Notes under the pieces: generated by a model
What the model was told of the DNA's origin: nothing
The model's database searches: none
The model's input: only the letters and a program-made list of their open reading frames with translations
Shown: positions 1-34,792 of the stretch, piece by piece
Layout of the letters: each line of letters begins with the position of its first letter
Position numbering within the stretch: position 1 is the first letter of the stretch
Source of the DNA: Botryllus schlosseri
Lineage: Eukaryota
Length of the DNA: 64,000 bases
Assembly: GCA_051294905.1 (NCBI GenBank)
Contig: CM119371.1
Location: 27,590,001 to 27,654,000 of the forward strand
Direction of reading: 5' to 3'
Translations under genes and position numbers: made by a program

Positions 1-233
1 GGATAAGGGACAGGTTCGACTGAAATAGGCATAAATGCCGCTAATTAGCTAATACGGACGTTCGAGCTGCATGGTCATTCAGGAGTTGATTGAAAGTGAC
101 GACCCTTTTTTAGTCAACTCCACAAATTTTCCAGCAAAAACAGCAGAATCGGCTGTGATAAGTCATGATCTACTAGCTTTTCTGATTTAGTAAAAGTGCC
201 CTCCTTTCACAATTCCAAAATTCAGTGACCCTA
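1..233. mobile_element. hAT-type MITE family Z, partial (truncated by window edge)
   Basis: Ends ...CAGTGACCCTA at 233 and aligns with the complete copy at 28214-28560. Confidence 0.7.
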
Positions 234-2530
234 CATCGAAGACTCACCGAACCGAATGCATAAAACACCTTTTATGTGACTACCACCAAGTGTTGCATGT
301 TATATTTAATACAGAACATGAAATATGTGTTTTCGCAGTCTATAACGACGATACGGGAATGCTGTTGTGATGATGCTGATTGTCGGATCGTGCGTTCCGG
401 AAATTGTGTGTCCGTGAAAAAGATCTAGCTTCGAATCGTTCCATCCAGTATCGAGATCAGAAACGTGGGCACTGGACATATCACTCTTGCCCACCAATAT
501 ATTGTGAAGATCTGTGTTGAAGGGTTGCGCCTCATGAATTCTACGCCGATGTCGTAATATGGTAGCATTAGTCAATTCTCACACATAGCGAGTATGTGGG
601 ACTGTGGAATATTGCTACCATGTTTTAACTCCTTAAATTTGAAAGGAAAATTCTGTAGGCTAAATATACACCATTTTATAAGTTTGAGTAATTAGAATAG
701 CAGTACACAATGTCCGGTTGGGATACGGGGCATTTTGGTAATCTTTTATTCACACCGGAACTGTAGGGTGCAAGTGATGCTTAAGGTTAATTCGCGCGCG
801 TATTTATCTTCCGGTAAGATTTCTTGTTATTTGTTTCGTATATCTATACCACATCGACTAACGAAAATGCAGTATCTGGTAAGCGACCATGCGGTTGGTT
901 GCACAACTACAATCTAAGAATTAGGTGAGGTAAACGGAAAGCCCCAAGTCGTTCAGCCTAATCTATGTATTTTGGTGTCGCCCTGATCACCGGAATTTGG
1001 TTGATAACGACAGGTGCAATCGACCGTTAGAATAATTGAGATTCCTCAAAAGTGTCATAAATCAGCGGGTGCAAAAGATTTGCAGCAACGAGCTGAATTC
1101 AAAGATATTTTAGGGAATACGAATAGAGATCATCGATACTTGATGTCTGTAGCGACATACGTATATACTAGGGATGGTGTAAACGTGAGGTTCACGTTCG
1201 CGTTCTGTGTGTGAACCTCAGAAATTGAGAGATTCTCGTTCACAAACGAACCTTGGTAGGTTCTGCACTGTGAACCTTTTTCATATATTACAGTCTTCAC
1301 TTCATTATAACATCTTTGGTTGGAATTTATCGCATTTTAACTGTATGTCGCTAGCAGCATAAGATATCAACACTAAAAGAGCATGCACCTTGGCAATCTC
1401 CACAATTTTACTTGCTTTGTTACAGAAAATTACTCGAAATATCCGGCTTTCCGTTTGTGAATATTTAGTGACTCTATGCTGTGAGCTTGACCCACAATCA
1501 CACAACATCAATAGCGAAATACACTGCTTGTAGTTAGTCATCGAATGATGCTTATTAAACCAATCAATGAAATTGATATTGTTGTCTGATGTAAAAAAAT
1601 CCAGCAGGCATACAGGTTCAATCTTGACTTCGTATGTTTATTGTATCATAAAATCAAATCCGTGCGATTAGGGTGTTGGCTATACTGTTGTATAAGTTGT
1701 TAATGGGGTAATATCGGTAGCAAGTATAGAAAGCCATTTTACACTCTGCTCAATATCAACGTGGCAATACTCGGACGCCGAATACATTGTCCTGTCTGGC
1801 CTAGACCGTTAAGGCGTAAGCTTTTATTCCTTTGCATTGCAAGCAGGTATACTCGTAGAAATTGTTGGTAAATCTACGGAAGATAGTGATTTTATGGGAC
1901 TGTTATGTCATTTGATTGCCCCAGTTGATACAATTGGCGACGTTAAAAACGTCAATCGTACTCAAGCATTGTGGCATTATGTGGTCCAAGATGTCGCTAG
2001 GTATCGTGCACATTAAATAGGCTATCATTTCACTGAAATGTAGGGTTGAAATTAGCAAAATGACGTCACTTGACATCATGAGGTTAACGTTCACGTTCAC
2101 ACAGAACCTTTCAAAACGGTTCGCGTTCACACCAGTGTTGGGATCAAGTCACTATCTTCGAGTCACGAGTCATTTTGAGTCATTGCACATTTTGACTCGA
2201 GTCAAGTCATGTCAATCGATTTTCGAAGGTGACTCGAGTCAAGTGAAGTCACCCGATTTTTGAAGGCGACTCGAGTCAAGTCGAATCAAGTCAAGTCAAG
2301 TCACGAGTCAAGTCACAATTCAAGTCAAGTTGCCTTTTCGAAGTATGAGGCATGATAACGTCCTTGCATTTTGCTAGCTGTCTGAATTACAGATTTAGTG
2401 GTCATTGATTCTGAACCGATGAGCGGTTATAGAGTTAAATATACATGCAAGAAGGCGCTGTATCGCTCACATATACGAAGAACTGCTAAACTACGTTAGT
2501 AATTGCAAAGCTTCAGTTTAGAGTTACCAG

Positions 2531-3520
2531 TAGGGATGGTGTGAACGTGAGGTTCACGTTCGCGTTCTGTGTGTGAACCTCGGAAATTTAGAGGTTCGCG
2601 TTCACAACAGAACCTTGGTAGGTTCTGGACTGTGAACCTTTTCCATATATTACAATTTTCACTTCATTATAAAAGATCTTTGGTTCAAATTTATTGCATT
2701 TCAACTGCGGGCCACTTTATGCATGGCGTTGGCAGCATTAAAAATCTACAGTAAACGAGCATGTACCTTGACAATCTCATAAGTTTTACTTGCTTTGTTA
2801 CAAAAGTTTTCTTGGAATATCCAGCATTCTGTTTGTGAGTATTTAGTGACTCTCTGCTGTGAGCTTGACCCGCAATCACACAACATCACTAGCGAAATAC
2901 GTGGTCAAGGAATGATGCTTATTCAACCAAATAATGAGATTGATATCGTTTTCTGATGTAAAAAATCTAGCAGGCCGACGGGGTGAATCTTGGCTCCATA
3001 TCTTCACTGCATCATTAAAACCGAATCCATGCGATTGAGGTGTTGGCTACTGCTGGGTAACTTGTTAATGGGGTAATATCGGTAGCAAGTCTAGAAACCC
3101 GTTTTACACTCTGCTCAGTATCAATAGCAATACTCAGACGCCGAATACATTGTTCCGTCTGGCCTAGACCGTTAAGGCGTAAGCTTATATTCACTGGTAG
3201 GTCCTCGTCGAGATTGTTGGCAAAGCGGCGTAAGATAATGATTTTGTGGGAGTATTTTATCCTTCGATTGCGTCAGTTGATACATTTAGCGATGTTTAAA
3301 ACGCCAATTTGTACTTATGCATTGTGGCATTATGTGGTCCGAGCCGTCGCTAGGTATCGTGTACATTAATATAGGGTATCACTTCATTGAAGATAGGGTT
3401 GTAATTACCAATATGACGTCGCGTGACGTCATGAGGTTCACGTTCGCGTTCACACAGAACCTTTCAAAAAGGTTCGCGTTCACACGAACCTGAACCTTTC
3501 AGAGGTTCACACCATCCCTA
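2531..3520. mobile_element. MITE family X copy (left arm of composite)
   Basis: TIR TAGGGATGGTGTGAAC / GTTCACACCATCCCTA; left flank GTTACCAG, right flank GTACGTAT (no TSD of its own). Confidence 0.9.
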
Positions 3521-4418
3521 GTACGTATTATGTGCGGCCGGTGAAAATGCGTCTCCACTATAATGCAGTTCGATCGCTAGGACGTCAATCTCCTTTTACG
3601 AATATCCTCCGTGTTTGATCAAATAAAAATCTAAAAAGGCCCGATTCTAAAACGCCCAGTTATGTCTACATTTCATCAATTAATATATATTCTTTCAAAG
3701 GAGCAAATCAGGTCGGCCCGCCATTCAGCGACCCAGGGATTTCTAAAACTTTAGAAATCCCTGCAGCGACCGCATCAAACGGAATTGAGACAATCGCATG
3801 CCGCTGTCCTTTCATAAATTGCCTCGACGCTGTGTTACCAAAGTAGGTCTGACTGAATGACTTTTTCAGAGAGCGCCAAGGCTTAAAGCTGGCCTTGTTT
3901 GCTGTGGTAAATAATGAGAGCGTATCGTGTATTTGCTTTGGGAGTCGCGCCCCAGACACAAGTGTTCTTACAGAAGGGCCTACGAAATTATACAATGCCG
4001 GCAACGGGCGAGTTTCAGTCGGTAATAAAATTGCCGGCGGCGCAAAAGGGAACAAACACAAAAATCCAGAAACCAAACAAAAATCGAGCACTTAATTGAA
4101 TGGAATGACCGGCGGATCGTATAATGCGTTCGAGGTAACGGCTTATCGCCGTTTGACTGCCTTGTTGACCTTGAATAGGGTGATTAGCGAATAATATGTA
4201 TCATTGAACGAACAAAGTGATATCACTGATGCCGGTCGTCCATGTTGAATGATACAGAACTAATGACTAAATGAAACAAAATAAAAAAATATAGTTTTTG
4301 CAAATGAAAACTAGCCAGCAACGTAGCCATCTGGATAGCGTGGCAAAGAAGCCATCAATATCAAATATATTCTTTGTATTGTAGAAGTGAAAACAGCTTG
4401 TACAGTACGACCTCGAAG

Positions 4419-5079
4419 TAGGGATGGTGTGAACGTGAGGTTCACGTTCGCGTTCTGTGTGTGAACCTCGGAAATTTAGAGGTTCGCGTTCACAACAGAA
4501 CCTTGGTAGGTTCTGCACTGTGAACCTTTTTCATATAGTACAATTTTCACTTCATTATAACATCTTTGGTTCATATTTATTGCATTTCAACTGCGGGCCA
4601 CTCTATGCATGGCGCTGGCAGCAATAAAAATTAACACTAAACGAGCATGCACCTTGATACGCTCAAAAGTTTTACTTGCTTTGTTACAAAAGTTTGCACG
4701 AAATATCCAGCTTTCCGTTTGTAAATATTTAGTGACTCTCTGCTATGAGTTTGACCCGCAATCACACAACATCACGAGCGAAATACGTAGTCAGCGAATG
4801 ATCCTTATTCAATCAATCAATGAGATTGATATCGTTTTCTCGTGCAAAAAATCTAGCTAGCGATGTTTAAAACGCCAACATGGAGTTCGATGTGGCCTGA
4901 GTCGTCGCTAGGTGTCGTGTACATTAATACAGGCTATCACTTCATTGAAAGATAGGCTTGGAATTAGCAAAATGACGTCACGTGACGTCATGAGGTTCAC
5001 GTTCGTGTTCACACAGAACCTTTCAAAAAGGTTCGCGTTCACACGAACCTGAACCTTTCAGAGGTTCACACCATCCCTA
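4419..5079. mobile_element. MITE family X copy, internally deleted (right arm of composite)
   Basis: Same TIRs; left flank CCTCGAAG, right flank GTTACCAG (5080-5087), which matches the left flank of the 2531 copy. Confidence 0.9.
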
Positions 5080-6152
5080 GTTACCAGCCAAAATAGAGAA
5101 TAGAGAAACGAAATCATAAGATGCAACACATTACCCATTTACAAATTGATATGACACAATTCGAGCCTGTGCCAATGGTTGAGGACTATACAAACTATAT
5201 TCGAATTCAATTTCAGTAAAACAAGAGGTTTGGAGTTTAGTTAAGGTAAGAACAGAGTACAGAAATAGACATTTTGCTACTAAATTACTTTACTATACTA
5301 GTTTACGACAACGTAAGCTGTAATCTTCGATCAATTCGTTTGCAGTCAATTTATTTGTGAGAGAACAATGGAGGTTCAGTAAAACGCACGATCATTGAAT
5401 GATTGGTCGCTCTCACTCTCTCCGCACTCACATATGCAAGATACAGTGATTTTTATCGACACCGATTACTTGATGACTTGAAATTGACTCGTGAATTTTG
5501 CGAAGAGTCACGAGTCAATCCACATTTCTGATACGCCGAGTCAAGTCAAGTAAATTCATTTTAGCAAAGTGACTCGAATCAAGTCAAGTCATACGAAAAA
5601 GGTGACTCGAGTCAAGTCATGACTCGAGTCATCCCGACACTGGTTCACACGAACCTGAACCTTTCAGAGGTTCACACCAGCCCTAGATATGCTCGGGGCT
5701 ACGGTGTCATACTGATGGAATCACTGTAACTTGACGTCAGTGCGGTAAAGCTGTGTTGCGCTTCAAAAAAAGTCGATTTCTCGTATACTTGAGGGAACAA
5801 CCAAAGTTGTGTGTGCGAACCTCAGAAATATGGAGTGTCGCATTCGCAAACAAACCTTGCTATGTCCTATACTGTGAACGTTTTCCATATATTATTATAT
5901 ATTAGTCCCGCGACCACAGGCAGCACACACGAATACGGTTAGATTCGTATCAGGCTTAATTTGTAAAATAATGCAATCAGTGCGCCTGATTAGCGGTCAT
6001 TGTTCTCACTCACAGACGGTGTTCTGTAAAAAAAACGCTCCAGAAAGACCCCGCTCGTACTTCCAGATTCTAAATTTCGCGTCATCTATGGCGTTGTATG
6101 GTTGTACCCGTATACTCGCCGGGCCGTATACTGGGAGGGCATTTTCGACTTT

Positions 6153-6201
6153 CTGAAAAAAGAGGACGAATCCTCTTAAACGAGGACGTACGGTAACTCT
6201 A
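6153..6201. mobile_element. Solo terminus of MITE family Z (also at ~31073-31122)
   Basis: AAGAGGACGAATCCTCTTAAACGAGGACGTACGGTAACTCTA resembles the right end of 61893-62312. Confidence 0.5.
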
Positions 6202-6684
6202 GAAAACATACGCCCTGCTGAGGCGGAGGACATGCTATAGCGAAGCACAGCAAGGCGATTTAACCAAGCCACAGAGTGCTCAGGATACATCCTGATATTA
6301 ACTCATACGCACGACAGCATGTGTTAACAATGTAATTCACTGCTTTCAATTCATAAACAAAAATGCACGCCGCAAAATAACTCTAGTCTTGGGCCCGTAA
6401 ACGTATATTCTGCTTCACACTTGGCCCGCCAAGAAAAATAATTTCCCCATCTTGAACTACCTTGACATAAAGAATGCATCTCTGTCTAATGTAAAAAGTT
6501 TAGCAGACGTATGGGATCTATCTTGAATTGGTATGGTTATTGTATCATAAAACCAAATCCACTAGATTTGCAATGTCCGTTGCAAGTATACGTACAGAAA
6601 CGATTTATTTCTCGCTTCAATCAGCATCAATATAGCTATGGTCTGACGCCCCATGAATACATTATTGTCCGCTTTGACCTAGAC

Positions 6685-7982
6685 CAGTGGTTCCCAACCT
6701 TTTTCGACTCATCGCCCCCTTTTCAAACTCCACACCAATCATCGCCCCCCAAATATTGGGAACCGAAAAATGGGCATACAGACTGATATCACCAACGAGT
6801 TGACTGAGAAAAAAGGTCAACTTTTCGGCTCGAACTCGAAATTACACTTTTCCAGCTAAATATTGGTTGAGTTGACTAACAAAAAAGGTGATTTCTCCGA
6901 CTTGATTCCCAAAGGACCGCAACAGCACTTCGTCAGCCCCCCGCCCCAATACGTTGGCCTTGACCCCCCCTCCATAGGGCGATAAAGCAAACTTCTGCAC
7001 CCCCCAGACCAAACTCCCCGATACCACTTTACCGCTACTTCTCAGCACAAATTCTTGGAGTCTTAGTTAGTCCGCTTAATTCGCGCGAAGCTCGAAAAAT
7101 TTCAATCATTCATGATTGAATCGGTCGGGAATTGCATATATATTGCTGTCAATTTTTTATCCTCTCTCTGCTCATGTATTCAGATTTACCGGTAAAGCTG
7201 AGTGAGGTGTCTTGGAAAATGTAGGGCCGGTAAATAATAATTGAACATATTTGGGCGGACTCGTGGGTATAATGACTTCGTCACGTAATGACATTTCGTG
7301 GCCTGTCTGCTATGTCAAAAGATATTCAAATCGCCCATACGTACTAGACTAAAAGACGCACACGATTTCAAATTGGTATTTCTGCACTGGCAATTAATTT
7401 TTCTCTGCGGGATGGAATTTGTTGAGGGGTTCTGATAGCCAGGACAGGATCATTTGGCGCCAGCCATTTAGATGCCTTTGGACAATTAAATATATATGTA
7501 TATCGTATATATATCGAATTCGGTCAGCATAAAGGCAGTCCTTTTCCGCCAAGGTTTTCTCGTTTTGGCACACTTTTGGGAGCCGCATGTTACATGGCCT
7601 GAAACTTCATATGTCTTGGTGCGTCATGGTGTGACAATGGCTGACGCCGAGATGCCCATTTCTATAACTCATGCGTATTATTTCTTGGAGGAAGGGTACC
7701 CAATAAGTAAGAAATATGTGACACGGAATGGCGCGCAGCGCGAAACTTTTTGAAAAAGTTTTAGTAGTTTTTAAAATATTACTCTATAATTATTGTAAAT
7801 TCACGAAAAGAATTGTGGACCACCTTCGAGCTCGGGTCCCCATCCCAATTGGGGGTTTGGATGTGGTAGTTACGGTCATGGACGCCAATATAGCCATTTC
7901 AACGCGTCATCGCCCCCCTATCGCCCCCTTCGTCCGTTTTCGCCCCCCTGGACCGACAAATCGCCCACGTTGGGAACCACTG
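6685..7982. mobile_element. hAT(Buster/Charlie-like) non-autonomous element, unit 1 only
   Basis: Perfect 14-bp TIR CAGTGGTTCCCAAC; perfect TSD ACCTAGAC (6677-6684, 7983-7990); subterminal ATCGCCCCC repeats; absent at the equivalent site in unit 2 (~31600). Confidence 0.93.
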
Positions 7983-8111
7983 ACCTAGACCTTCGTCGAA
8001 ATTATTTGCAAAACGAGTATCGCAGGACCGACCCGCGCGCTGCCATTCCAAATCCAATGTCTATAAATATGCTTGGAATACTGAATACTTTCTGCAATGT
8101 GACGTAGGCAA

Positions 8112-8715
8112 GCAGTCACGTTTGAGGCTCCAGCACTAGTAGACCATCATATGTGCCGCCCACCCGCCCTGATACCTCTCTTCCATTGCCTTACTGTCCT
8201 GGTGGAACCTTTATCCCTGCTCTTCAATTATATGTAAACTACAGACCACCAAGGTTTGCAGGAAAACGATCTAAGTGGCTGAAGAGATAGTGAACCTTGA
8301 TACTCATATTCACACATGAATCTTTCAAGCTGGAAAGCATATCTTCCAGCAATTCTTGGTATTTTTCAGCTTTTCGGTTACCATGAAAATTCCGTGTGAC
8401 AAAAACATACGAACACACAATAGACACAGCTTTTATGCGTTTGTGGATTTGAGGGCCATCAAAAATGCCTGCTTTTTTATGGTCAAAGTATGGAATAATC
8501 CGCGAGTAGTTGAAGCAATCCCCAGTTGCAGGCAAGGATTTCACCAATTGCTTCATCAAACCAAGTTTTATGTGCATCGGTGGGATGATGATATTCTCTC
8601 TAGCGACTAAATGTTCAATTATGATGTTAGCTTCACCTACTCTCATGGAAACTCTAGGTGACCACCCTTTCTTCCATGGATTTCAAGAAATAGTTCTAGA
8701 AATCCCTGCTTTCTT
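8112..8715 (-). pseudogene. Decayed DNA-transposon transposase, Chapaev3/CMC-like
   Basis: Minus-strand motifs PPMHIKLGLMKQLVK, AGIFDGPQI, NMSIKVHYLFSHLDRFPANLG, then EEQG*RFHQD...MEERYQG.W..CWSLKRD with in-frame stops. The family assignment is from recalled motif similarity, not a search. Confidence 0.7.
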
Positions 8716-11700
8716 CACCCTGTGACCAGTGCGCGCTCCGCTATCCCACAAGCAGCTAAGTGGCCAAATGTGGCCCGCGAGGTTATCCTCGAAATTTGTT
8801 ATATTTTTAAAAAAGTATTCACCAAGCAGGTCATTTATTTATGAACCTTCAAAGCCAACAAAAATTCAATCATCCTGACCGCTAAATTTGGGATGTTAAC
8901 GACGCATTGACATAGTCAGGGGTCAGTCACATGCTTTGTAATTCTTCGTATATGACCATAAAGTACATTGCTTCATGGCGGATACATTTGACTTGAATTT
9001 TTTCTTAGCGCTTCGCGCGATTTCTTGTCATTCGATTTCTTGCTTTTATTGCTGGTACACCATCCTGAAATGGAAAAATTGAAATACATTCAACCTAAAG
9101 AAATGAGTCTAACTTTATTTGCACATGTAGTTCAACATGCGACTTCGTGTCTGCACTCGCAGAATGATCGTCGGCGATGAAACCTATGCACAAAATTATA
9201 AACGCATTTTCACCGAAATCTTCGATATTGATAAGTCCATTGTCCATGTCTAAGCGCGGAAAAAACCTATCTTTGCCAAATAAACCCAGCGATATACAAA
9301 GGCTGCCCGCAATATATGCAAGTAATTGAGCGAATTCATTCAAAAACTTTAGAATAAAATTCGCGCCTCACGAGGCTAGGTGTTTTCATGGCATAGTTGT
9401 TACCGATTTTGATGCGTAGTAAGATAAGTCTTGTTTTCACCGTTACCTAACCCGGCTCACTCCTGTAGGACTAGTAAAAATAGTCATCAACATTCAAGTG
9501 GCCCACGAAATGGTTCGTAAATCTAATGTGGCCGTTTGATCGAAAATTTCGGCCACTCCTGCTATAAACTCTCAGGCATTCGGATACCAAAGTAGTACGC
9601 ATGTCGTAGTATAGGACGTTTTGTGGCCACAAGGAAAATGTTGCTAACTGCATGCTATGCAAAATAATATCATGTTTATGGACCATGACTTTTTGGCAGT
9701 GCTTTGTGGAAAATATTTTTCGATTCTTAGATACGTCCAGCCGAACTTTCAAGGCCTCAGCGACGGCAAAGTAGTATTGAAAGTTGTTTACACATTATCC
9801 TTGGAAAGAAGTGGTACATTTTTGTTACTCGGGAATATCCACTCGGGTGTCGAATCATTATAATGTATACTCGACTCGGATTTTAACAAGGTTTCAAATT
9901 ACAAGAATTATTTTGAACGAGTTTTCAAAGAACAACTATCTGACTGGATTGTGTTATTTATCTATGTCATACAATAAAGTGGTATTTGAATACGAAACCG
10001 CAAAATTAAAAATTCAGCATTGCGCAAATTTATATCGATATCTTTCATTTTGATGGTTCGTGAGACGATTATGACATAATTTGGTAAATAATATTTTCCG
10101 CTTTATCACGACAACATACGGTGATTTACAACGAATTGAGCGTAACAACTTTCGATTTACAAGTTTCTTCACGACCGCTGTTATTTGGAATATTGTTGTT
10201 TGATATGGCATCGCAAGATATTTTCGGACGATTCTCCTATCACAATACAAGGGATAGCCTGCTTCAAGATCCCGTAGTGTCAGTAATTTACAATTGAATA
10301 GTATATTCACATTAAAATGAATCCGAATCTTTTCGGCTAAGACTTATCGGGGGTGATCGTCAGCAACTAGTTAAGAATCAAATTAATTTTATTATGAATA
10401 ATGAATATTCTATTCAATGGTACATCGAAGCTCTGTACCTCCGATAAGCTCTTCGAATATGACAGTAAAATGAACAACGGAATGTCTTTTCACAATCTGC
10501 AAGTGAACCTGTATTAATTCCAATTGGTCAGTATTTGGCAGCAATGCATGGCGACGCAGAAGTGCCGTAAACAATGAGAGTATCTGTGTACGCAGACTTG
10601 TAAATCGTACGAACTTTGTCACGATCGTTGATAACACCCTATAAATTTATATTACCACATGATATTCCATTGAATATCTTTCCATCACAACAGAACATCA
10701 CGTTTATTATTATCAGTATACCAGCGCTCAAACCTATAGCGTATCAGCAAAATGTTTTAATGGTCACGGTCACAATCTGTCGATCCAATTATGCTGATTC
10801 AGTGCTGCGATTACAAAGCATGAGTGGACCATTAAATTCCATGACTCTAGTACGAGCCTAACGCCGCTTGGAAGAGGCGTCTTTGTATCTGCTTATGGGA
10901 TACAAGCACATACCAGCCTAAAAATATATGACGTTGTCTGCCTGACACGCGAACGAAGTCGCTATTACATTGAGAAATCGTACTTAATGCGTTCACAATT
11001 GTGCAAAATTCAATTTGTGAAGGGTTGGTTGTGTATGTAGGATGTGCTTATCTCTGTTTTGTGTGGATTTAGAATCAATATCTCTCGAGAAGTGAATTGC
11101 GTACGATGAAATTGAAATGGAAAACTTGAATACATTGTCATCCGTTTTCCTCATTCTATCATGGTGTTTTCTCGTGATATGGAAATACATTCGCGCCTCT
11201 GACCCCAGTATCAGTTTTGGGTATGCCTGTAAAAGTGGGGTCGCCAACACAGCCGTCAATGATCAGTAACTATTGCCATTGAAACAAGGTGTGTATTAAT
11301 TTTTACACCAACTTCGTCATTAAGGATTATTTTTAGGGGTGTAAATTATTTCATTTATTTACTATTTCAGGGAAGGGCTTATTTTGGAAATATAATCGAA
11401 TTTCAGGATATCCTTCGTCATAAAACAAGTACAGATAGTACTGTTTTGATATAGAAAAGATATTATAGAGAAAGGAATAGTGCATAAACGCTGTTCATTT
11501 CCGAAATGTTTACCGTGTTGAACAGCGAGCAGTTACATAACAGCTTCCAGTTGCCGCTGAAAGCTTAATGAAATCGTATATTGAACTCAAGTTACTTGCT
11601 GTGGCGTATTTTGATAAGGTCAATATCATCCCGATGACCAGATGTAGTAATTTCGATATGTGTTGGATGAGATTTTGTTGTCTGATTTCCAACTGAGCAT

Positions 11701-28213: not shown

Positions 28214-28560
28214 TAGGGTTATACCATATACGTCCTCCTATTTCAGGTTTTTGAAAATGTCCTCCAAGGACGCCTAAATATCCTACTTTTTGGCAATTCG
28301 TCCTCATTTACAGCTTTTGCAGCAAGGATAATGGACAGGTTCGACTGAAATAGGCATATATGACGCTAATTAGCTAATACGGACGTTCGAGCTGCATGGT
28401 CATTCAGGAGTTTATTGAAAGTGACGACCTTTTTATAGTCAACTCCACAAATTTTCCAGCAAAAATAGCAGAATCGGCTGTGATAAGTCATGATCTACTA
28501 ACTTTTCCGATTTAGTAAAAGTGCCCTCCTTTCCCAATTCCAAAATATATGGTAACCCTA
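28214..28560. mobile_element. hAT-type MITE family Z
   Basis: Ends TAGGGTTATACCATA / TATGGTAACCCTA; both ends align in reverse orientation with 61893-62312; missing at the equivalent site near 52955. Confidence 0.78.
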
Positions 28561-29502
28561 CATTGAAGACTCACCGAACCGAATGCATAAAACACCTTTC
28601 ATGTGACTACCACCAAGTGTTACATGTAATATTTGATACAGAACATGAAATATGTGGTTTCGCAGTCTAAAACGACGATACAGGAATGCTGTTATCTGTT
28701 ATAATGATGCCGATTGTCGGACCATCCGGAAATTGTGTGTCCGTGAAAAAGTTCTCGCTTCGGATCGTTCCATCCAGTATCGAGATCAGAAACGTGGACA
28801 CTGGACATATCACTCTTGCCCACCAATATATTGTGAAGATCTGTGTTGCAGGGTTGCGCCACATTAATTCTACGCTGATGTCGTAATATGGTAGCGTTAG
28901 TCAATTCTCACTCATAGCGAGTATGTGGGACTGTGGAATATTGCTATCATGTTTTAACTCCTTAAATTTGAAAGGAAAATTCTGTAGGCTAAATATACAC
29001 CATCTTATAAGTTGGAGTAATTAGAATAGCAGTACACAATGTCCGTTTGGGATACGGGGCATTTTGGTAATCTTTTATCCACACCGGAACTGTGGGGTGC
29101 AGTGATGCTTAAGGTTAATTCGCGCGCGTATCTATCCTACGGTAAGATTTTTTGTTATATGTTTCGTATATCTATACCACATCGACGAACGAAAATGCAG
29201 TATCTGGTAAGCGCCCATGCGGTTGGTTGCACAACTACAATCAAAGAATTATGTGAGAAAAAGGTAAACGGAAAGCCCCAAGTCGTTCAGCCTAATCTAT
29301 GCTTGTTAGTGTTGCCCTGGTCACCGGAATTTGGTTGATAACGACAGGTGCAATCAACCGTTAGAATAATTGAGATTCCTCAAAAGTGTCATAAATCAGC
29401 GGGTGCAAAGGTTTTGCAGCAACGAGCTGGATTCAAAGATATTATAAGGAATACGAAAATAGATCATCGATACCTGATGTCTGTAGCGACATACGTATAC
29501 AC

Positions 29503-30513
29503 TAAGGATGGTGTGAACGTGAGGTTCACGTTGGTGTTCTGTATGTGAACCTCAGAAATTTAGAGATTCACGTTCACAAACGAACCTTGGTAGGTTCTGC
29601 ACTGTGAACCTTTTTGATATAGGCTACTACAGTTTTCACTTCATTATAACATCTTTGGTCGAAATTTATCGCATTTTAACTGTGGGCCACTGTATATCGC
29701 TAGCAGCATAAAATATCAACACTAAAAGAGCATGTACCTTAAAAATTTTACTTGCTTTGTTACAAAAAATTACTCGAAATATCCGGCTTTCCGTTTGTGA
29801 ATATTTAGTGACTCTGTGCTGTGAGCTTGACCCACAATCATACAACATCAATAGCGAAATACACTGCTTGTAGTTAGTCAGCGTTTGATGCTTATTAAAC
29901 CAATCAATGAAATTGATATCGTTGTCTGATGTAAAAAAAATCTAGCAGGCATACGGGGTAAATCTTGACTTCGTATGTTTATTGTATCATTAAATCAAAT
30001 CCGTGCGATTGGCTATACTGTTGTATAAGTTGTTAATGGGGTAATGTCGGTAGCAAGTATAGAAAGCCATTTTACACTCTACTCAATATCAACGTGGCAA
30101 TACTCGGACGCCGGATACATTGTCCTGTCTGGCCTAGACCGTTAAGGCGTAAGCTTTTATTCCATTGCATTGCAAGTATATAGGCATACTCGTTGAAATT
30201 GTTGGTAAATCTACGGAAGAAAGTGATTTTATGGGATTATTGTTATGTCATTTGATTGCCCCAGTTGATACAATTGATGACGTTAAAAACGTCAATCGTA
30301 CTTAAGTATTGTGGCATTATGTGGTCCGAGTTGTCGCTGGGTATCGTGCACATTAATATAGGTTATCATTTTACTGAAATGTAGGTTTGAAATTAGCAAA
30401 ATAACATCACGTGACGTCATGAGGTTCACGTCAACGTTTGCGTTCACACAGAACCTTTCAAATCGGTTCGCGTCACACGAACATGTACCTTTCAGAGGTT
30501 CACACCATCCCTA
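29503..30513. mobile_element. MITE family X, uninterrupted counterpart of 1169-5685
   Basis: TIR TAAGGATGGTGTGAAC / GTTCACACCATCCCTA; same flanks as the unit 1 copy. Confidence 0.9.
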
Positions 30514-30634
30514 GATACGCTCGGGGCTACGGTGTCATACTGGGGGAATCACTGTGACTTGACGTCAGTGCGGTAAAGCTGTATTGCGCTTCAGAAAAAA
30601 AAGTCGACTTCTCGTATACTTGAGGAAACAACCA

Positions 30635-30825
30635 AAGATGGTGCGACTGCGAGGTTCGCGTTCACGTTGTGTGTACATACCTCAGAAATATGGAGTGTCG
30701 CATTCGCAAACAAACATTGGTAGGTCTTATACTGTGAACGTTTTCCATATATTAATATATGTTTGTGTCGTTGAAATTATTTTCATTTCAATTTCGGACC
30801 ACACTCTGTATGGCGTTGGCGCCTA
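30635..30825. mobile_element. Older, diverged relative of family X (5' part; counterpart ~5805-5895)
   Basis: GATGGTGCGACTGCGAGGTTCGCGTTCACG...CCTCAGAAAT...ACTGTGAACGTTTTCCATAT resembles the left end of family X. Confidence 0.5.
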
Positions 30826-31765
30826 ATAGTCCCGCGACCACAGGCAACACACACGAATACAGTTAGATTCGTATCAGGATTAATTCGTAAAATAATGAAA
30901 TCAGTGGGCCTGATTAGCGGTCATCCTCATTCACAAACGGTGTTCTGTAAAAAAAACGCTCCAAAAATACCCCGCTCGTACTTCCAGATTCCAAATTTCG
31001 CGTCATTTGTGGCGTTTTATGGTTGTACCCGTATACTCGCCTGGCCGTATACTGGGAGGACATTTTCTACTTTCTGAAAAAAGAGGACGAATCCTTTTAA
31101 AGGAGGACGTACGGTAACTCTAGAAAACATACGCCCTGCTGAGGCGGAGCAGTTGCTAGCGAAGCACAGCAAGGCAATTTAACCAAGCCACAGAGTGCTC
31201 AGGATACATCCTGATATTAACTCATACGCACGACAGCATGTGTTAACAATGTAATTCACTGTTTTCAATTCATAAACAGAAATGCATGCCGCAAAATAAC
31301 TCCAGTCTGAACTTGGGCCCGTAAACGTATATTCTGCTTCACATTTGGCCCGCCAAGAAAAATAATTTCCCCATCTTGAACTACATTGACATAAAGAATG
31401 CATCTCTGTCTAATGTAAAAAGTCTAGCAGGAGTAGGGGATCTATCTTGAATTGGTATGGTTACTGTATCATAAAACCAGATCCGGCAGATTTGCAATAT
31501 CCTTAGCAAGTATACATAAAGAAACTTTTTTTCGCTTCAATCAGCACCAATGTAGCTATGGTCTGACCCCTCATGAATACATTATTGTCCGGTTTAACCT
31601 AGGCCGTCAATGTGAAATCTTATATTATATTCCATTTCGAGTCTTCGTCGAAATTATTTGCAAAAGTATAGTATCGTAAAACCGACCCGCGCGCTCCCAT
31701 TTCAAATACAATGTCAATAAATATGCTTCGAATACTGAATACTTTCTGGAATGTGACGTAGGCAA

Positions 31766-32385
31766 GCAGTCACGTTTGAAGCTCCAATACTAGTCGACCA
31801 TCATATGTGCTGCCCACCCGCCCTGTTATACCTCTCCTTCATGACCTTACTGTTCTGGTGGAACCTTTATCCCTGCTCTTCAACTATATGTAAACTACAG
31901 ACCGCCAAGGTTTGCAGGAAAACGATCTAAGTGGCTGAAGAAATAGTGAACCTTGATACTCATATTCACACATGAATCTTTCAAGCTGGAAAAGTGGAAA
32001 ACATATCTTCCAGCAATTATTGGTATTTTTCAGCTTTTCGGTTACCAAGAAAATTCCGTATGACTAAAACATACGAACACACACTAGACACAGTTTTTGT
32101 GAGTTTGTGGATTTGCCGGTCATCAAAAATGCCTGCATTTCGATGGTCAAAGCATGGAATGTTCCGCGAGTAGTTGAAGCAATCCCAAGTTGCAGGCAAG
32201 GCTTTCACCAACTGCTTCATCAAACCAAGTTTTATGTGCATCGGTGGAATGATGATATTCTCTCTAGCAACTAAAGGTTCAATTATGATGTTACCTTCAC
32301 CTACTCTCATGAAATCTCTAGGTGACCACCCTTTCTTCCAAGAATTACAAGAAATAGTTCTGGAAATCCCTGCCTTCTTCACCCG
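31766..32385 (-). pseudogene. Decayed Chapaev3/CMC-like transposase, duplicate copy
   Basis: Paralog of 8112-8715 (PPMHIKLGLMKQLVKAL, NFLGNRKAEKYQ) with different disruptions. Confidence 0.7.
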
Positions 32386-34792
32386 GTGCTCAGTGTGCGC
32401 TCGGCTATCCCACATACAGATAAATGGCCAAATGTGACCGGCGAGGTTATTCTCGAAATTTGTTATATTTTCAAAAAAATATTCACCACGCAGGTCATTT
32501 ATTTATGAACCGTCAAAGCCAACCAAAAATTCAATCATCCTGACCGCTAAATTCGGGATGTTAACGACGCATTGACATAGCCAGGGGTCAGCCACATGCT
32601 TTGTAATTCTTCGTGTATGACCATAAAGTACAATGTTTCGCGGCGGATACATTTGACTTGAATTTTTTCTTAGCGCGATTTCTTGCCATTCTATTTCTTG
32701 CGTTTATTGCTGGTACACATTCCTGAAATGTAAAAATTGAAATACATTCAATCTAAAGAAATGAGTCTAACTATATTTGCACATGTCGTTCAACATGCGA
32801 ATTCGTGTCTGCACTCGCAGAATGATCGTCGGCGATGAAACCTTTGCACAAAATTATAAACGCATGTTCACCGAAATCTTCGATATTGATAAGTCCATTG
32901 TCCATGTCCAAACGCCGAATAATCCTATCTTTGCCAAATGAGCCCAGCGATATACAGAGGCTGCCCGCCCTGTTTCATTCAAAAACTTTAAAAAAAATCG
33001 CGCCTCACGAGGCTAGGTGTTTTCATGACATAGTTGTTACCGGTATTGATGCGTAGTAAGAGAAGTCTTGTTTTCACCGTTACCTAATCTGGCTCACTCC
33101 TGTCGGACGATTAAAAATAGTCATCAACATTCAAGTGGCCCACGAAATGGTTCGTAAAGCTAATGTGGCCCTTTGGTCGAAAATTTCGGCCACCCCTGGT
33201 ATAAACTCTCAGGCATTCGGATACCAAAGTAGTACTCATGTCGTATTGGTACGTTTTAGTGGCCACAAGGACAGTGTTGCCAACTGCAAGTTATGCAAAC
33301 TAATATCGTGGTCATGGACCATGACTTTTTGGCAGCGCTTTGTGGAAAATATTTTTCGAATCTTGGATACGGCCAGCCGAACTTTCGAGGCCTCAGCGAT
33401 GGCAAATTAGTATTGAAACATTTTTACACATTATTGTTGGAAAGAAGTCGTATATTTTTGTTGAACGGAAATATTTACTCGGGTCTCGAATCATCATAAT
33501 GTATATACTCGGATCTGATTGGAACAAGGTTTCAAATCAAAACTATTATTTTGAAAGAGGTTTTAAATGAAAACTATCTGTCTGGTTCGTGTTATTTACG
33601 CATGTCATATAATAAAGTGTTATTTGGTTACGAAATCGGAAATTACAAATTCAACATTGCGCAAATTTTGATTTATCATCTATCTTACGATATGATTGTT
33701 CGCGAGACAAATACGACATAATTTGTTAAATAATATTTTTTGCTTTATCACGACAAAATACGGGATCAAGAACGTACTGTGCTTAACAACTGTCATTTTA
33801 CAAGGTTTTTCATGACCGCTGTTATTTGGCATTTTGTCGTTTGATATTGCGTCGCAAGATAGTTTCAGACCAAATTCTCCATTCACAATATATGTGATAC
33901 TTCAACATCCCGTAGTGACAGTAATTTATAATTAAATACTATATTCATATTGCAATGAATCCATATATTTTTGGCTGACACTTGTCAGGGGTAATCGTCA
34001 ACATCTAGTAGATAATCCAATCCATTTCAATCTGATCAAGCTCTGTACCTCAAAGACACTCTTCAAATATGGCGGTAATTTGAACAACGCAATATCTCTT
34101 CACAAGCTGCCAGTGAACCTGAATTAATTCCTTGGTGTCAGTATTTGGCAGCAATGCATGGCGACGCAGAAGTGCCGTACACAATGAGTGTATCCGTATA
34201 CACAGACTTGTAAATCGTACGAATTTTGCCACGATCGTTGATAACACCCATAAAATTATATTACCACGTGATCTTCGATTGAATATCTTTCCATCACAAC
34301 AGCACATCACGTTTATTATAATCAGTATGCCAGCGCCCACACCTATAGCGTATCAGCAAAATGTTTTAAATATCATTGGTCAAAATCTGTATATTGAATC
34401 ATGCTGATTTAGTGCTGGGACGACAAAGCATGAGTGGACCATTAAATTTCATTACTCTAGTAGACTACGAGTCTAACGCCGCTTCAATGAGGCTTCTTTG
34501 TTTCTGCTTATGTGATACAAGCATTTGCCAACCTAAAAATAAATGACGTTGTCTGTCTGACACACGAACGAAGTCGCTTTTACATTGAAAAATCGTACTC
34601 AATGCGTTTACAACTGTGCAACATTCGATTGGTGAAGGGTTGTATGTAGAATGTGCTTCTCTCTGCTCTGTATAGATTTAGAATTAATGTTTCTCGAGAA
34701 GTGAATTACGATGAGGAAATTCAAATGGAAACTTGAACTCATTGTCATCTGTTGTCCTCGTTCGATCATGGTGTTTGCTCGTGATATGGAAA

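What the first reader, a model, noticed from the sequence alone, without database searches (positions are those of the whole stretch)
2531..5079. Composite MITE transposon: two MITE copies flanking ~0.9 kb of foreign cargo inside one target-site duplication
Seen: two direct copies of family X (2531-3520, 4419-5079) bracket 3521-4418, which I do not find elsewhere in the window. Neither copy has its own TSD (inner flanks GTACGTAT and CCTCGAAG), but the outer flanks are the identical 8-mer GTTACCAG. Removing 2531-5087 restores a continuous MITE B. Established: hAT transposases make 8-bp TSDs and can use ends of two nearby elements (Ac/Ds macrotransposition); the layout resembles bacterial composite transposons. 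Inference: host DNA was moved as a unit by paired MITEs. An alternative is recombination of an X-containing circle into a resident X copy. Either route is a MITE-driven way of capturing host sequence next to a receptor cluster.
Basis: partly seen in the sequence, partly recalled or inferred. Interest (0 to 1): 0.72.

Follow-up and report, generated by a model that had tools for sequence, protein, structure and literature searches.

The report
Transposon pair that moved host DNA
Two copies of a small cut-and-paste (hAT-type) transposon enclose a 0.9-kb copy of a single-copy sequence from another chromosome inside one 8-base target duplication, most likely because the pair jumped as one unit, which is a behaviour already known from maize and so of modest interest.

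Summary
X2 (2531-3520) and X3 (4419-5079) are complete, directly oriented copies of a roughly 1-kb non-autonomous hAT-like family with at least 5,700 candidate copies. Neither copy has its own target-site duplication (TSD), but the outer flanks are the same 8-mer, GTTACCAG. Removing 2531-5087 restores a 953-bp element B that aligns unbroken with all 29 other B copies examined.

New here: the cargo (3521-4418) has one homolog in the genome, a unique stretch on contig 8. It is 93% identical, carries no X copies, and its similarity stops exactly at the X3 end. X2 and X3 belong to different X subfamilies, so they are not duplicates of each other. Unitigs from independent public runs cross both inner junctions.

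Best reading (about 0.6): a hAT macrotransposon, as in maize Ac/Ds and the Tam3L White Cap locus. A donor locus carrying both X copies was not found. Copying by homology into an X already resident at this recurrent insertion site in B remains a rival (about 0.2).

The cargo shows no gene, and its position near the receptor cluster is incidental. This scan has already noted similar hAT composites elsewhere in this genome. Verdict: a new member of a known kind.

The parts
1169..2132 (+). Left part of X1, an older copy of family X that was split by the insertion of B
   Evidence: The end sequence is at 1169 with 1 mismatch. It is 82-83% like X2. Its paralog at 29503-30513 is unbroken.
2125..2132 (.). 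Left copy of B's 8-bp target duplication, GTTCACAC
   Evidence: The same 8-mer lies at 5643-5650, directly outside B's ends.
2133..2530 (+). Left arm of element B, a hAT-like non-autonomous element whose end reads CAGTGTTGGGAT
   Evidence: 85-93.5% identical to other B copies. B copies elsewhere are 780-982 bp and nearly all have perfect 8-bp TSDs.
2523..2530 (.). Left copy of the composite's target duplication, GTTACCAG (native B sequence)
   Evidence: It is present once at this position in 22 of 28 uninterrupted B copies.
2531..3520 (+). X2, a complete 990-bp copy of family X and the left border element of the composite
   Evidence: Both ends are perfect. It is 98% identical over its full length to G000:C11:3883882-3884871. 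It has no TSD of its own.
3521..4418 (+). Cargo: a copy of a single-copy host segment from contig 8
   Evidence: The only other genomic match is G000:C8:23605751-23606592. Identity is 93.2% over 848 aligned bases, colinear from end to end. There was no Pfam or Rfam match.
3726..3771 (.). 30-bp near-palindromic micro-element (3734-3763) flanked by its own 8-bp duplication CAGCGACC. It was inserted after the cargo was copied.
   Evidence: It is absent from the contig 8 homolog, which has CAGCGACC once. Other copies with their own TSDs exist.
4419..5079 (+). X3, a 661-bp copy of family X and the right border element. Both ends are intact. It has a private internal deletion of about 315 bp.
   Evidence: Ends are perfect. 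Its nearest relatives are 97-98% identical, but in every one the match splits at query position 440-444 with about 310 extra bases between the halves. It has no TSD of its own.
5080..5087 (.). Right copy of the composite's target duplication, GTTACCAG
5088..5642 (+). Right arm of element B
5643..5685 (+). Right end of X1. The first 8 bases, GTTCACAC, are the right copy of B's target duplication.
   Evidence: (family D10).

Best explanation
**What it is.** The block 2531-5079 is a hAT macrotransposon.

**Inferred history.** Two non-autonomous X elements from different subfamilies inserted independently, in the same orientation and about 0.9 kb apart. The site was a locus homologous to G000:C8:23605751-23606592, at the target sequences GTACGTAT and CCTCGAAG. 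A transposase supplied in trans then paired the left end of one element with the right end of the other. It cut out or copied the 2.5-kb unit and integrated it at GTTACCAG inside a resident B element on contig 1. This made the single 8-bp duplication. Later, X3 lost about 315 internal bases and a 30-bp micro-element landed in the cargo.

**Shown here.**
- The structure and the single outer duplication.
- The continuity of the target site in other B copies.
- The homolog on contig 8, colinear with the cargo.
- The independent origin of the two X copies.

**Inferred.**
- The donor arrangement with two X copies.
- The action of the transposase on the two outer ends.
For: 1. The outer flanks are identical 8/8, while each X lacks its own TSD. 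Solo X copies normally have one.
2. The target is unbroken, with one GTTACCAG, in other B copies. The window B's closest relative, C16:5745785, is empty.
3. The cargo is colinear with one unique locus, and similarity ends at the inner X ends.
4. The inner flank GTACGTAT fits the X target consensus. The contig 8 sequence has ACTCGAAG where the window has CCTCGAAG next to X3.
5. X2 is 98% like one set of copies over its full length. X3 is 97-98% like a different set in both of its halves. X2 and X3 are only 84-90% alike internally. Each is therefore a coherent, separate element.
6. X inserted at the same B site at three other loci, so X ends do integrate here by transposition.
7. The same diagnostics define maize macrotransposons, including cases where the progenitor locus persists (PMC9910405; bioRxiv 10.1101/082677; PMC3260210).
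8. Unitigs from two separate samples cross the inner junctions.
Against: - No locus with X-cargo-X, and no excision footprint, was found. The contig 8 homolog has no X and no footprint.
- Cargo and contig 8 differ by 6.8%, more than X2 differs from its nearest relative (2%). The timing works only if some of that difference is old allelic variation.
- The terminal ~100 bases of X2 and X3 are 99% alike. An exchange with a resident X inside those stretches would therefore be invisible.
- X is often resident at this B site, which raises the prior for that rival.
- No cognate transposase was identified.
- The outer junctions lie in repeats and could not be checked with reads.
Confidence: 0.6

Rival explanations
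1. **Homology-directed replacement.** The B element already carried a single X at GTTACCAG. A break in or at that X was then repaired from an ectopic X-cargo-X locus. Alternatively, a circle holding one X plus the cargo recombined with the resident X. In either case the old 8-bp duplication was kept.
For: - X occupies this very B site at C15:1256211, C12 (about 24012328-24013231) and C7 (about 20026975). A resident X is therefore plausible.
- The first ~100 and last ~90 bases of X2 and X3 are 99% alike, so crossovers there would leave no trace.
Against: - It needs the same unseen X-cargo-X donor, plus a resident X, plus an ectopic repair event.
- If that donor served as a repair template it would remain intact, yet no such locus is in the assembly. 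A popped-out circle would also remove it.
- Beyond the terminal ~100 bases, X2 is uniformly of one subfamily and X3 of another. The resident X could therefore have contributed only the extreme tips.
- The window B's nearest relative is empty.
- From general knowledge, hAT excision leaves no element sequence at the break to prime such copying.
Confidence: 0.2
2. **Composite insertion by reversed-ends transposition with re-replication.** Transposon ends insert at the target, and flanking donor DNA is re-replicated and joined between them, as described for maize Ac.
For: Such events also give transposon copies at both borders, donor DNA between them and one 8-bp TSD (PMC4270019 abstract; PMC9910405).
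Against: From the published model, the internal DNA would be a fusion of sequences that lay outside the element or elements at the donor. It would then be permuted or discontinuous relative to the empty locus. Here the cargo is colinear with contig 8 from one X end to the other, with only small indels.
Confidence: 0.04
3. **Assembly artefact.** Two true loci, B with a single X and an X-cargo-X locus elsewhere, were merged through the X repeats.
For: The outer junctions lie in high-copy repeats and no long read was available. Logan unitigs cannot bridge them.
Against: - Unitigs without any difference cross X2/cargo (3500-3590, run X1) and cargo/X3 (4197-4442, run X16).
- Window-type cargo sequence is present in three samples from three studies.
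- The assembly has 219 contigs for 495 Mb. This suggests long-read data that would span a 1-kb repeat, which is an inference.
- A merge would leave the donor's own outer flanks unplaced.
Confidence: 0.04
4. **Coincidence.** Two independent X insertions went into DNA that already lay inside B, and the matching outer 8-mers arose by chance.
For: None beyond the fact that closely spaced X copies exist. For example, L026 has two copies 300 bp apart.
Against: - The cargo is absent from 29 of 29 other B copies, and exactly one 8-mer is duplicated.
- In L026 each neighbour has its own perfect TSD.
- The chance of an 8/8 match is about 5e-4 or less.
Confidence: 0.01

Closest known systems
Maize Ac/Ds macrotransposons (Huang and Dooner 2008, as cited in PMC3260210 and PMC9910405)
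   Same: Two hAT elements in direct orientation. The 5' end of one and the 3' end of the other act as a pair. The DNA between them moves with them, and one 8-bp TSD forms at the new site.
   Different: In maize the events were observed genetically, with a known autonomous Ac and sizes up to about 100 kb. Here the event is inferred from sequence alone.
Tam3L macrotransposon at the maize White Cap (Wc) locus (bioRxiv 10.1101/082677)
   Same: A natural event recognised by the same criteria. The border elements lack their own 8-bp duplication. The two outer junctions share one. The interior is colinear with a progenitor locus that still exists elsewhere.
   Different: Wc carries whole genes (Ccd1 and its neighbours), has a phenotype and later amplified in tandem. 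Here the cargo has no recognisable gene and there is a single copy.
Bacterial composite transposons (IS-cargo-IS) and MITE-flanked composites in bacteria
   Same: Two copies of one mobile element bracket unrelated DNA, and the unit has one target duplication.
   Different: The enzyme superfamily is different. IS elements encode their own transposase, whereas the X copies here encode nothing.
Pack-MITEs / transduplication (for example grapevine mHatvine-10.1, PMC2817404)
   Same: Non-autonomous DNA transposons carrying host-derived sequence.
   Different: In Pack-type elements the host fragment lies inside a single element between one pair of ends, and the chimera amplifies. Here two complete elements with four intact ends flank the cargo, and the unit occurs once.

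Membership tests
hAT superfamily, non-autonomous element (families X and B) | 8-bp target-site duplication | tested here: met
   X: 21 of 29 copies have a 0-1 mismatch 8-bp TSD. B: nearly all copies examined have a perfect 8-bp TSD. The feature definition is as stated in PMC3942097.
hAT superfamily, non-autonomous element (families X and B) | Short terminal inverted repeats (10-25 bp) beginning with the YARNG-type motif | tested here: met
   X begins TAGGGATGGTGTGAAC and B begins CAGTGTTGGGAT. The motif itself comes from general knowledge. The TIR length range is from PMC3942097.
hAT superfamily, non-autonomous element (families X and B) | Ac-type target preference nTnnnnAn | tested here: met
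   In 17 perfect X TSDs, symmetrised, T is at position 2 and A at position 7 in 76%. The consensus itself is from general knowledge (Arensburger et al. 2011, cited in PMC3942097).
hAT superfamily, non-autonomous element (families X and B) | A cognate autonomous element encoding a hAT transposase with the same ends | not tested
MITE in the strict sense | Small size (usually under about 800 bp), high copy number, no coding capacity | tested here: inconclusive
   Copy number is high, with at least 5,735 candidates, and there is no long ORF. However, the full length is about 990 bp, so 'non-autonomous hAT element' is the safer name.
hAT macrotransposon | Two same-family elements in direct orientation at the borders, with an intact left end on one side and an intact right end on the other | tested here: met
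hAT macrotransposon | Border elements lack their own TSDs, the outer junctions share one 8-bp TSD, and the target is contiguous when empty | tested here: met
   The empty state was seen in paralogous B copies, not in an allele of this same locus.
hAT macrotransposon | The interior is colinear with a progenitor locus elsewhere | tested here: met
   G000:C8:23605751-23606592, 93.2% identical, colinear, and bounded at the X ends.
hAT macrotransposon | A donor carrying both elements, or an excision footprint at the donor | tested here: not met
   There is no other cargo copy. The contig 8 locus has no X and no duplicated 8-mers. Its flanks have no paralog. This may reflect a lost or unsampled allele, so it lowers proof of membership but not the resemblance in mechanism.
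hAT macrotransposon | Observed excision or reinsertion as a unit | not testable with these tools
   This needs genetics or population long-read data.
Pack-MITE / transduplicating element | Host fragment inside one element between a single pair of ends, with the chimera present in several copies | tested here: not met
   There are four intact ends, and the unit is present once.
Composite insertion by reversed-ends transposition | The interior is made of re-replicated outer flanks joined at an illegitimate junction | tested here: not met
   The cargo is colinear with contig 8 throughout.

The most novel reading that the evidence does not exclude
Pairs of non-autonomous hAT elements may act as macrotransposons repeatedly in this animal genome, making it a regular source of small dispersed duplications of host DNA. 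This copy may also still be segregating and exchanging sequence with its progenitor. Two observations point that way. The centre of the cargo is 96-98% identical to contig 8 while its ends are 84-90% identical. And some individuals show only contig-8-like letters in central stretches. Earlier notes of this scan describe other hAT composites in the same genome, including one carrying tRNA genes. A genome-wide and population-wide count could turn a maize curiosity into a measurable mechanism in animals.
Probability: 0.3. Interest if true: 0.5.

Novelty: new member of a known kind. Interest (0 to 1): 0.35.

Why it matters
It is a clean natural example, outside plants, of two non-autonomous hAT elements moving the host DNA between them. 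Every layer can be read from target duplications, and the progenitor sequence has been identified. It shows one way that small dispersed duplications can arise in an animal genome rich in such elements. It has no evident functional consequence: the cargo has no recognisable gene or RNA, and it landed inside a nest of other transposons about 12 kb from the LRR receptor genes.

Tried and rejected
- **Cargo as a normal part of B.** Rejected: B is unbroken in 29 of 29 copies.
- **Cargo as a repeat or mobile element.** Rejected: there are only two genomic copies, no TSD at contig 8, and contig 8's flanks are unique apart from an unrelated repeat at L002 390-844.
- **Contig 8 copy derived from the composite by later loss of both X copies.** Rejected: there is no duplicated 8-mer or footprint at its borders.
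- **B with an X as a pre-assembled unit that brought the TSD with it.** Unlikely. The B copy at C15 that carries an X is only 85.5% like the window B, against a median of 91% for the copies I held (those were themselves picked for their likeness to the window's B). The nearest relative (C16) is empty.
- **Cargo as coding.**
  - The 127-codon open frame (3711-4091, minus strand) has no Pfam match.
  - pN/pS against contig 8 is 0.65, from 6 versus 3 differences.
  - The only other signal is a weak Atlas resemblance to P450 fragments, with about 100 shared features, below the level expected for true members. I do not rely on it.
- **Cargo as a known RNA.** No Rfam match at E up to 1.
- **Long-read confirmation.** Not possible: all runs offered were short-read unitigs.
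- **Zygosity from depth.** In run X16, window-type cargo unitigs have depth of about 46 and contig-8-type unitigs 76-98. This hints at hemizygosity but is too noisy to claim.
- **Other X pairs with an outer-only TSD.** In the 312 kb I held I found only this one, plus one ordinary nested X.
- **Paper lookup.** PMC9339288 (Ac macrotransposon excision and reinsertion) is not held.

Full report
**1. Observation**

The region was read directly. The 16-base end TAGGGATGGTGTGAAC occurs without mismatch at 2531 (+), 3520 (-), 4419 (+) and 5079 (-). Shuffles of the window give 0.03 matches. These ends delimit two direct copies of one family:
- X2 is 2531-3520 (990 bp).
- X3 is 4419-5079 (661 bp).
- They are 91.7% identical over 660 aligned bases. 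The first 100 and last 90 bases are 99% identical, and the interior is 84-90% identical.

The outer flanks are GTTACCAG on both sides. The inner flanks are GTACGTAT (right of X2) and CCTCGAAG (left of X3).

**2. The families**

X has at least 5,735 candidate copies in the 495-Mb genome.
- Of 29 full-length copies fetched, 21 carry an 8-bp duplication with 0-1 mismatch.
- Seventeen perfect TSDs give a symmetric target profile. T is at position 2 and A at position 7 in 76%, with an overall GTAnnTAC-like pattern.
- The 8-bp TSD, the TAGGG-type ends and the nTnnnnAn preference are the usual marks of an Ac-type hAT element (definitions in PMC3942097 and from general knowledge).
- No transposase partner was sought.
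- At about 990 bp, X is long for a MITE.

The surrounding element B spans 2133-2530 plus 5088-5642.
- Its end reads CAGTGTTGGGAT.
- It is also hAT-like, with at least 3,400 candidates and perfect 8-bp TSDs in nearly all copies examined.

**3. The insertion is one unit**

- Joining 2133-2530 to 5088-5642 gives a 953-bp B element. It aligns across the join with 29 of 29 other B copies.
- In 22 of 28 of them the site reads GTTACCAG exactly once.
- Genome coordinates agree. At C16, C8, C3 and C11, the matches to the left and right arms overlap by 7-8 bases.
- So 2531-5087 is an insertion that duplicated exactly 8 bases, even though it contains two complete X copies that each lack a TSD.
- For contrast, two X copies 300 bp apart in L026 each have their own perfect TSD.
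- Using the measured target preference, I estimate the chance of two unrelated X flanks agreeing 8/8 at about 5e-4.

**4. The nest and its order**

- B lies inside an older X copy, X1 (1169-2132 and 5643-5685), with TSD GTTCACAC.
- Window 1-2132 and 5645-9000 is a 91-92% paralog of 28326-32665. The paralogous X (29503-30513) is unbroken. B and everything in it therefore arrived after that segmental duplication.
- Inside the cargo lies a 30-bp near-palindrome (3734-3763) with its own TSD CAGCGACC. It is absent from the progenitor, so it came last.

**5. Origin of the cargo**

A whole-genome search with 3521-4418 found one other copy, G000:C8:23605751-23606592. The only other hits were three short matches to the 30-bp micro-element.
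- The two copies are colinear and 93.2% identical over 848 aligned bases. The centre is 96-98% identical and the ends 84-90%.
- At the right border, similarity runs to the last base before X3. The window reads CGACCTCGAAG then TAGGG. Contig 8 reads CGAACTCGAAG then CAAAAAGG.
- At the left border, similarity is clear from 3531. A GTAC next to X2 may continue it.
- The contig 8 locus has no X at either border and no duplicated 8-mers.
- Its flanks are unique in the genome apart from an unrelated repeat.

So the cargo is ordinary single-copy host DNA, and the limits of its duplicated stretch coincide with X ends.

**6. Is the cargo functional?**

I found no evidence that it is.
- No Pfam match to its longest open frame.
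- No Rfam match.
- pN/pS of 0.65 from nine differences.
- Only a weak, low-overlap Atlas lead to P450 fragments.

**7. X2 and X3 are separate elements**

- X2 is 98% identical over its full length to a copy on C11. It belongs to a small group of copies 94-98% like it.
- X3's nearest relatives (97-98%) are a different set of loci, and they match both of its halves. None shares its 315-base internal deletion.
- The pair is therefore neither a tandem duplication nor an obvious chimera.

**8. A recurrent target**

- Junction-spanning searches found B carrying an X at the same site on C15 (L023), C12 (a single X of about 900 bp) and C7.
- From the two candidate counts (about 5,700 X, about 3,500 B) I reckon that random insertion would put about 0.04 X copies at this one site, summed over all B copies.
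- The C15 B is only 85.5% like the window B, while the window B's closest relative on C16 is empty.
- I read this as a hot spot rather than inheritance of a pre-built unit.
- It cuts both ways. It shows that X ends integrate here by transposition. It also makes a formerly resident X plausible.

**9. Reads**

Only short-read unitigs were available.
- A unitig with no difference covers 3500-3590 in run X1, and another covers 4197-4442 in run X16. These cross the inner junctions by 21 and 24 bases. That is about as far as 31-mer unitigs can enter a repeat, but it is below the tool's 31-base bridging rule.
- Window-type cargo sequence is present in three samples from three studies (X16, X1, X17), alongside the contig-8-type sequence.
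- In X16 the window type has about half the depth of the contig 8 type.
- In X16 and X1, some central stretches show only contig-8-like letters.
- These depth and letter patterns hint at polymorphism or gene conversion. I do not claim either.
- The outer junctions lie in repeats and remain unchecked.

**10. Mechanism**

The structure meets the diagnostics used for natural and experimental hAT macrotransposons:
- The border elements are in direct orientation and lack their own TSDs.
- The outer junctions share one 8-bp TSD.
- The interior is colinear with a progenitor locus that may persist.

These criteria come from maize Ac/Ds (PMC3260210, PMC9910405) and the Tam3L White Cap locus (bioRxiv 10.1101/082677). 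I put this reading at about 0.6.

The main rival, at about 0.2, is copying by homology into an X already resident at the hot spot.
- It needs the same unseen X-cargo-X donor plus more steps.
- If used as a repair template, that donor would remain intact, and it is not in the assembly.
- The resident X could have contributed only the terminal ~100 bases.
- It cannot be excluded.

Three other rivals rank much lower:
- A re-replication composite insertion is disfavoured by the cargo's colinearity with contig 8.
- An assembly artefact is disfavoured by the junction unitigs.
- Coincidence is refuted by B's continuity.

The cargo differs from contig 8 by 6.8%, more than X2 differs from its nearest relative (2%). 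This is acceptable only if part of the difference is old allelic variation. That is an inference.

**11. Comparison and verdict**

- This works like, and by structure qualifies as, a hAT macrotransposon.
- One membership feature, an identified donor or footprint, was tested and not found. Mobility as a unit cannot be tested here.
- In the library searched, macrotransposition is documented for maize and rice. For animals it appears only as a proposed origin of a P-element MITE in Anopheles (PMC1562414).
- Earlier notes of this scan (unchecked by me) report several similar hAT composites elsewhere in this genome, one with tRNA genes, and call the host a sea squirt.
- I therefore rate it a new member of a known kind: a tidy and instructive case with no visible functional consequence. 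Its link to the receptor cluster is only one of position.

Noticed in passing
window 3726-3771; also L003, L004, L005 near position 1501: A 30-bp near-palindrome (CAGGGATTTCTAAAACTTTAGAAATCCCTG), consisting of little more than two 14-base hAT-like ends, sits in its own perfect 8-bp duplication (CAGCGACC). It occurs at about 14 genomic loci with up to 3 mismatches. One other copy has a perfect 8-bp TSD and two have 7-8-bp TSDs. It is either an exceptionally small mobile element or a recurrent two-end remnant of a longer one.
   Followed up: partly
L023 (G000:C15:1254719-1258703) 1086-3637; G000:C12:24012185-24013381; G000:C7:20026825-20027084: Other B copies carry an X element at exactly the same internal site (GTTACCAG). 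From the candidate counts I reckon about 0.04 such cases by chance. The B copies involved are not close relatives of the window's B, which suggests an insertion hot spot.
   Followed up: partly
L023 2486-3488: An X copy is nested, in inverted orientation, in the right end of another X with TSD GTTCACAC. This is the same 8-mer, found in X's own subterminal repeats, that B used as its target in X1 of the window.
   Followed up: no
window 1-2132 and 5645-9000 versus 28326-32665: A segmental duplication at about 91.5% identity. The paralog lacks B and the composite. It also lacks a 1.3-kb element at 6683-7990 that is bounded by 20-base inverted repeats (6679-6698 and 7969-7988).
   Followed up: partly
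window 3531-4418 versus L002 1490-2342: Divergence between the cargo and its progenitor is uneven: 96-98% identity in the central 500 bases and 84-90% at both ends. In two public runs, some central stretches show only the contig-8-like letters. Possible causes are gene conversion between the copies, selective constraint, or polymorphism.
   Followed up: partly
window 4855-4860 (X3) versus X2 2971-3285: X3's internal deletion of about 315 bp is private to this copy. All close relatives keep the segment. The two halves of the match overlap by about 5 bases in the query, which suggests a microhomology-mediated deletion after insertion.
   Followed up: partly
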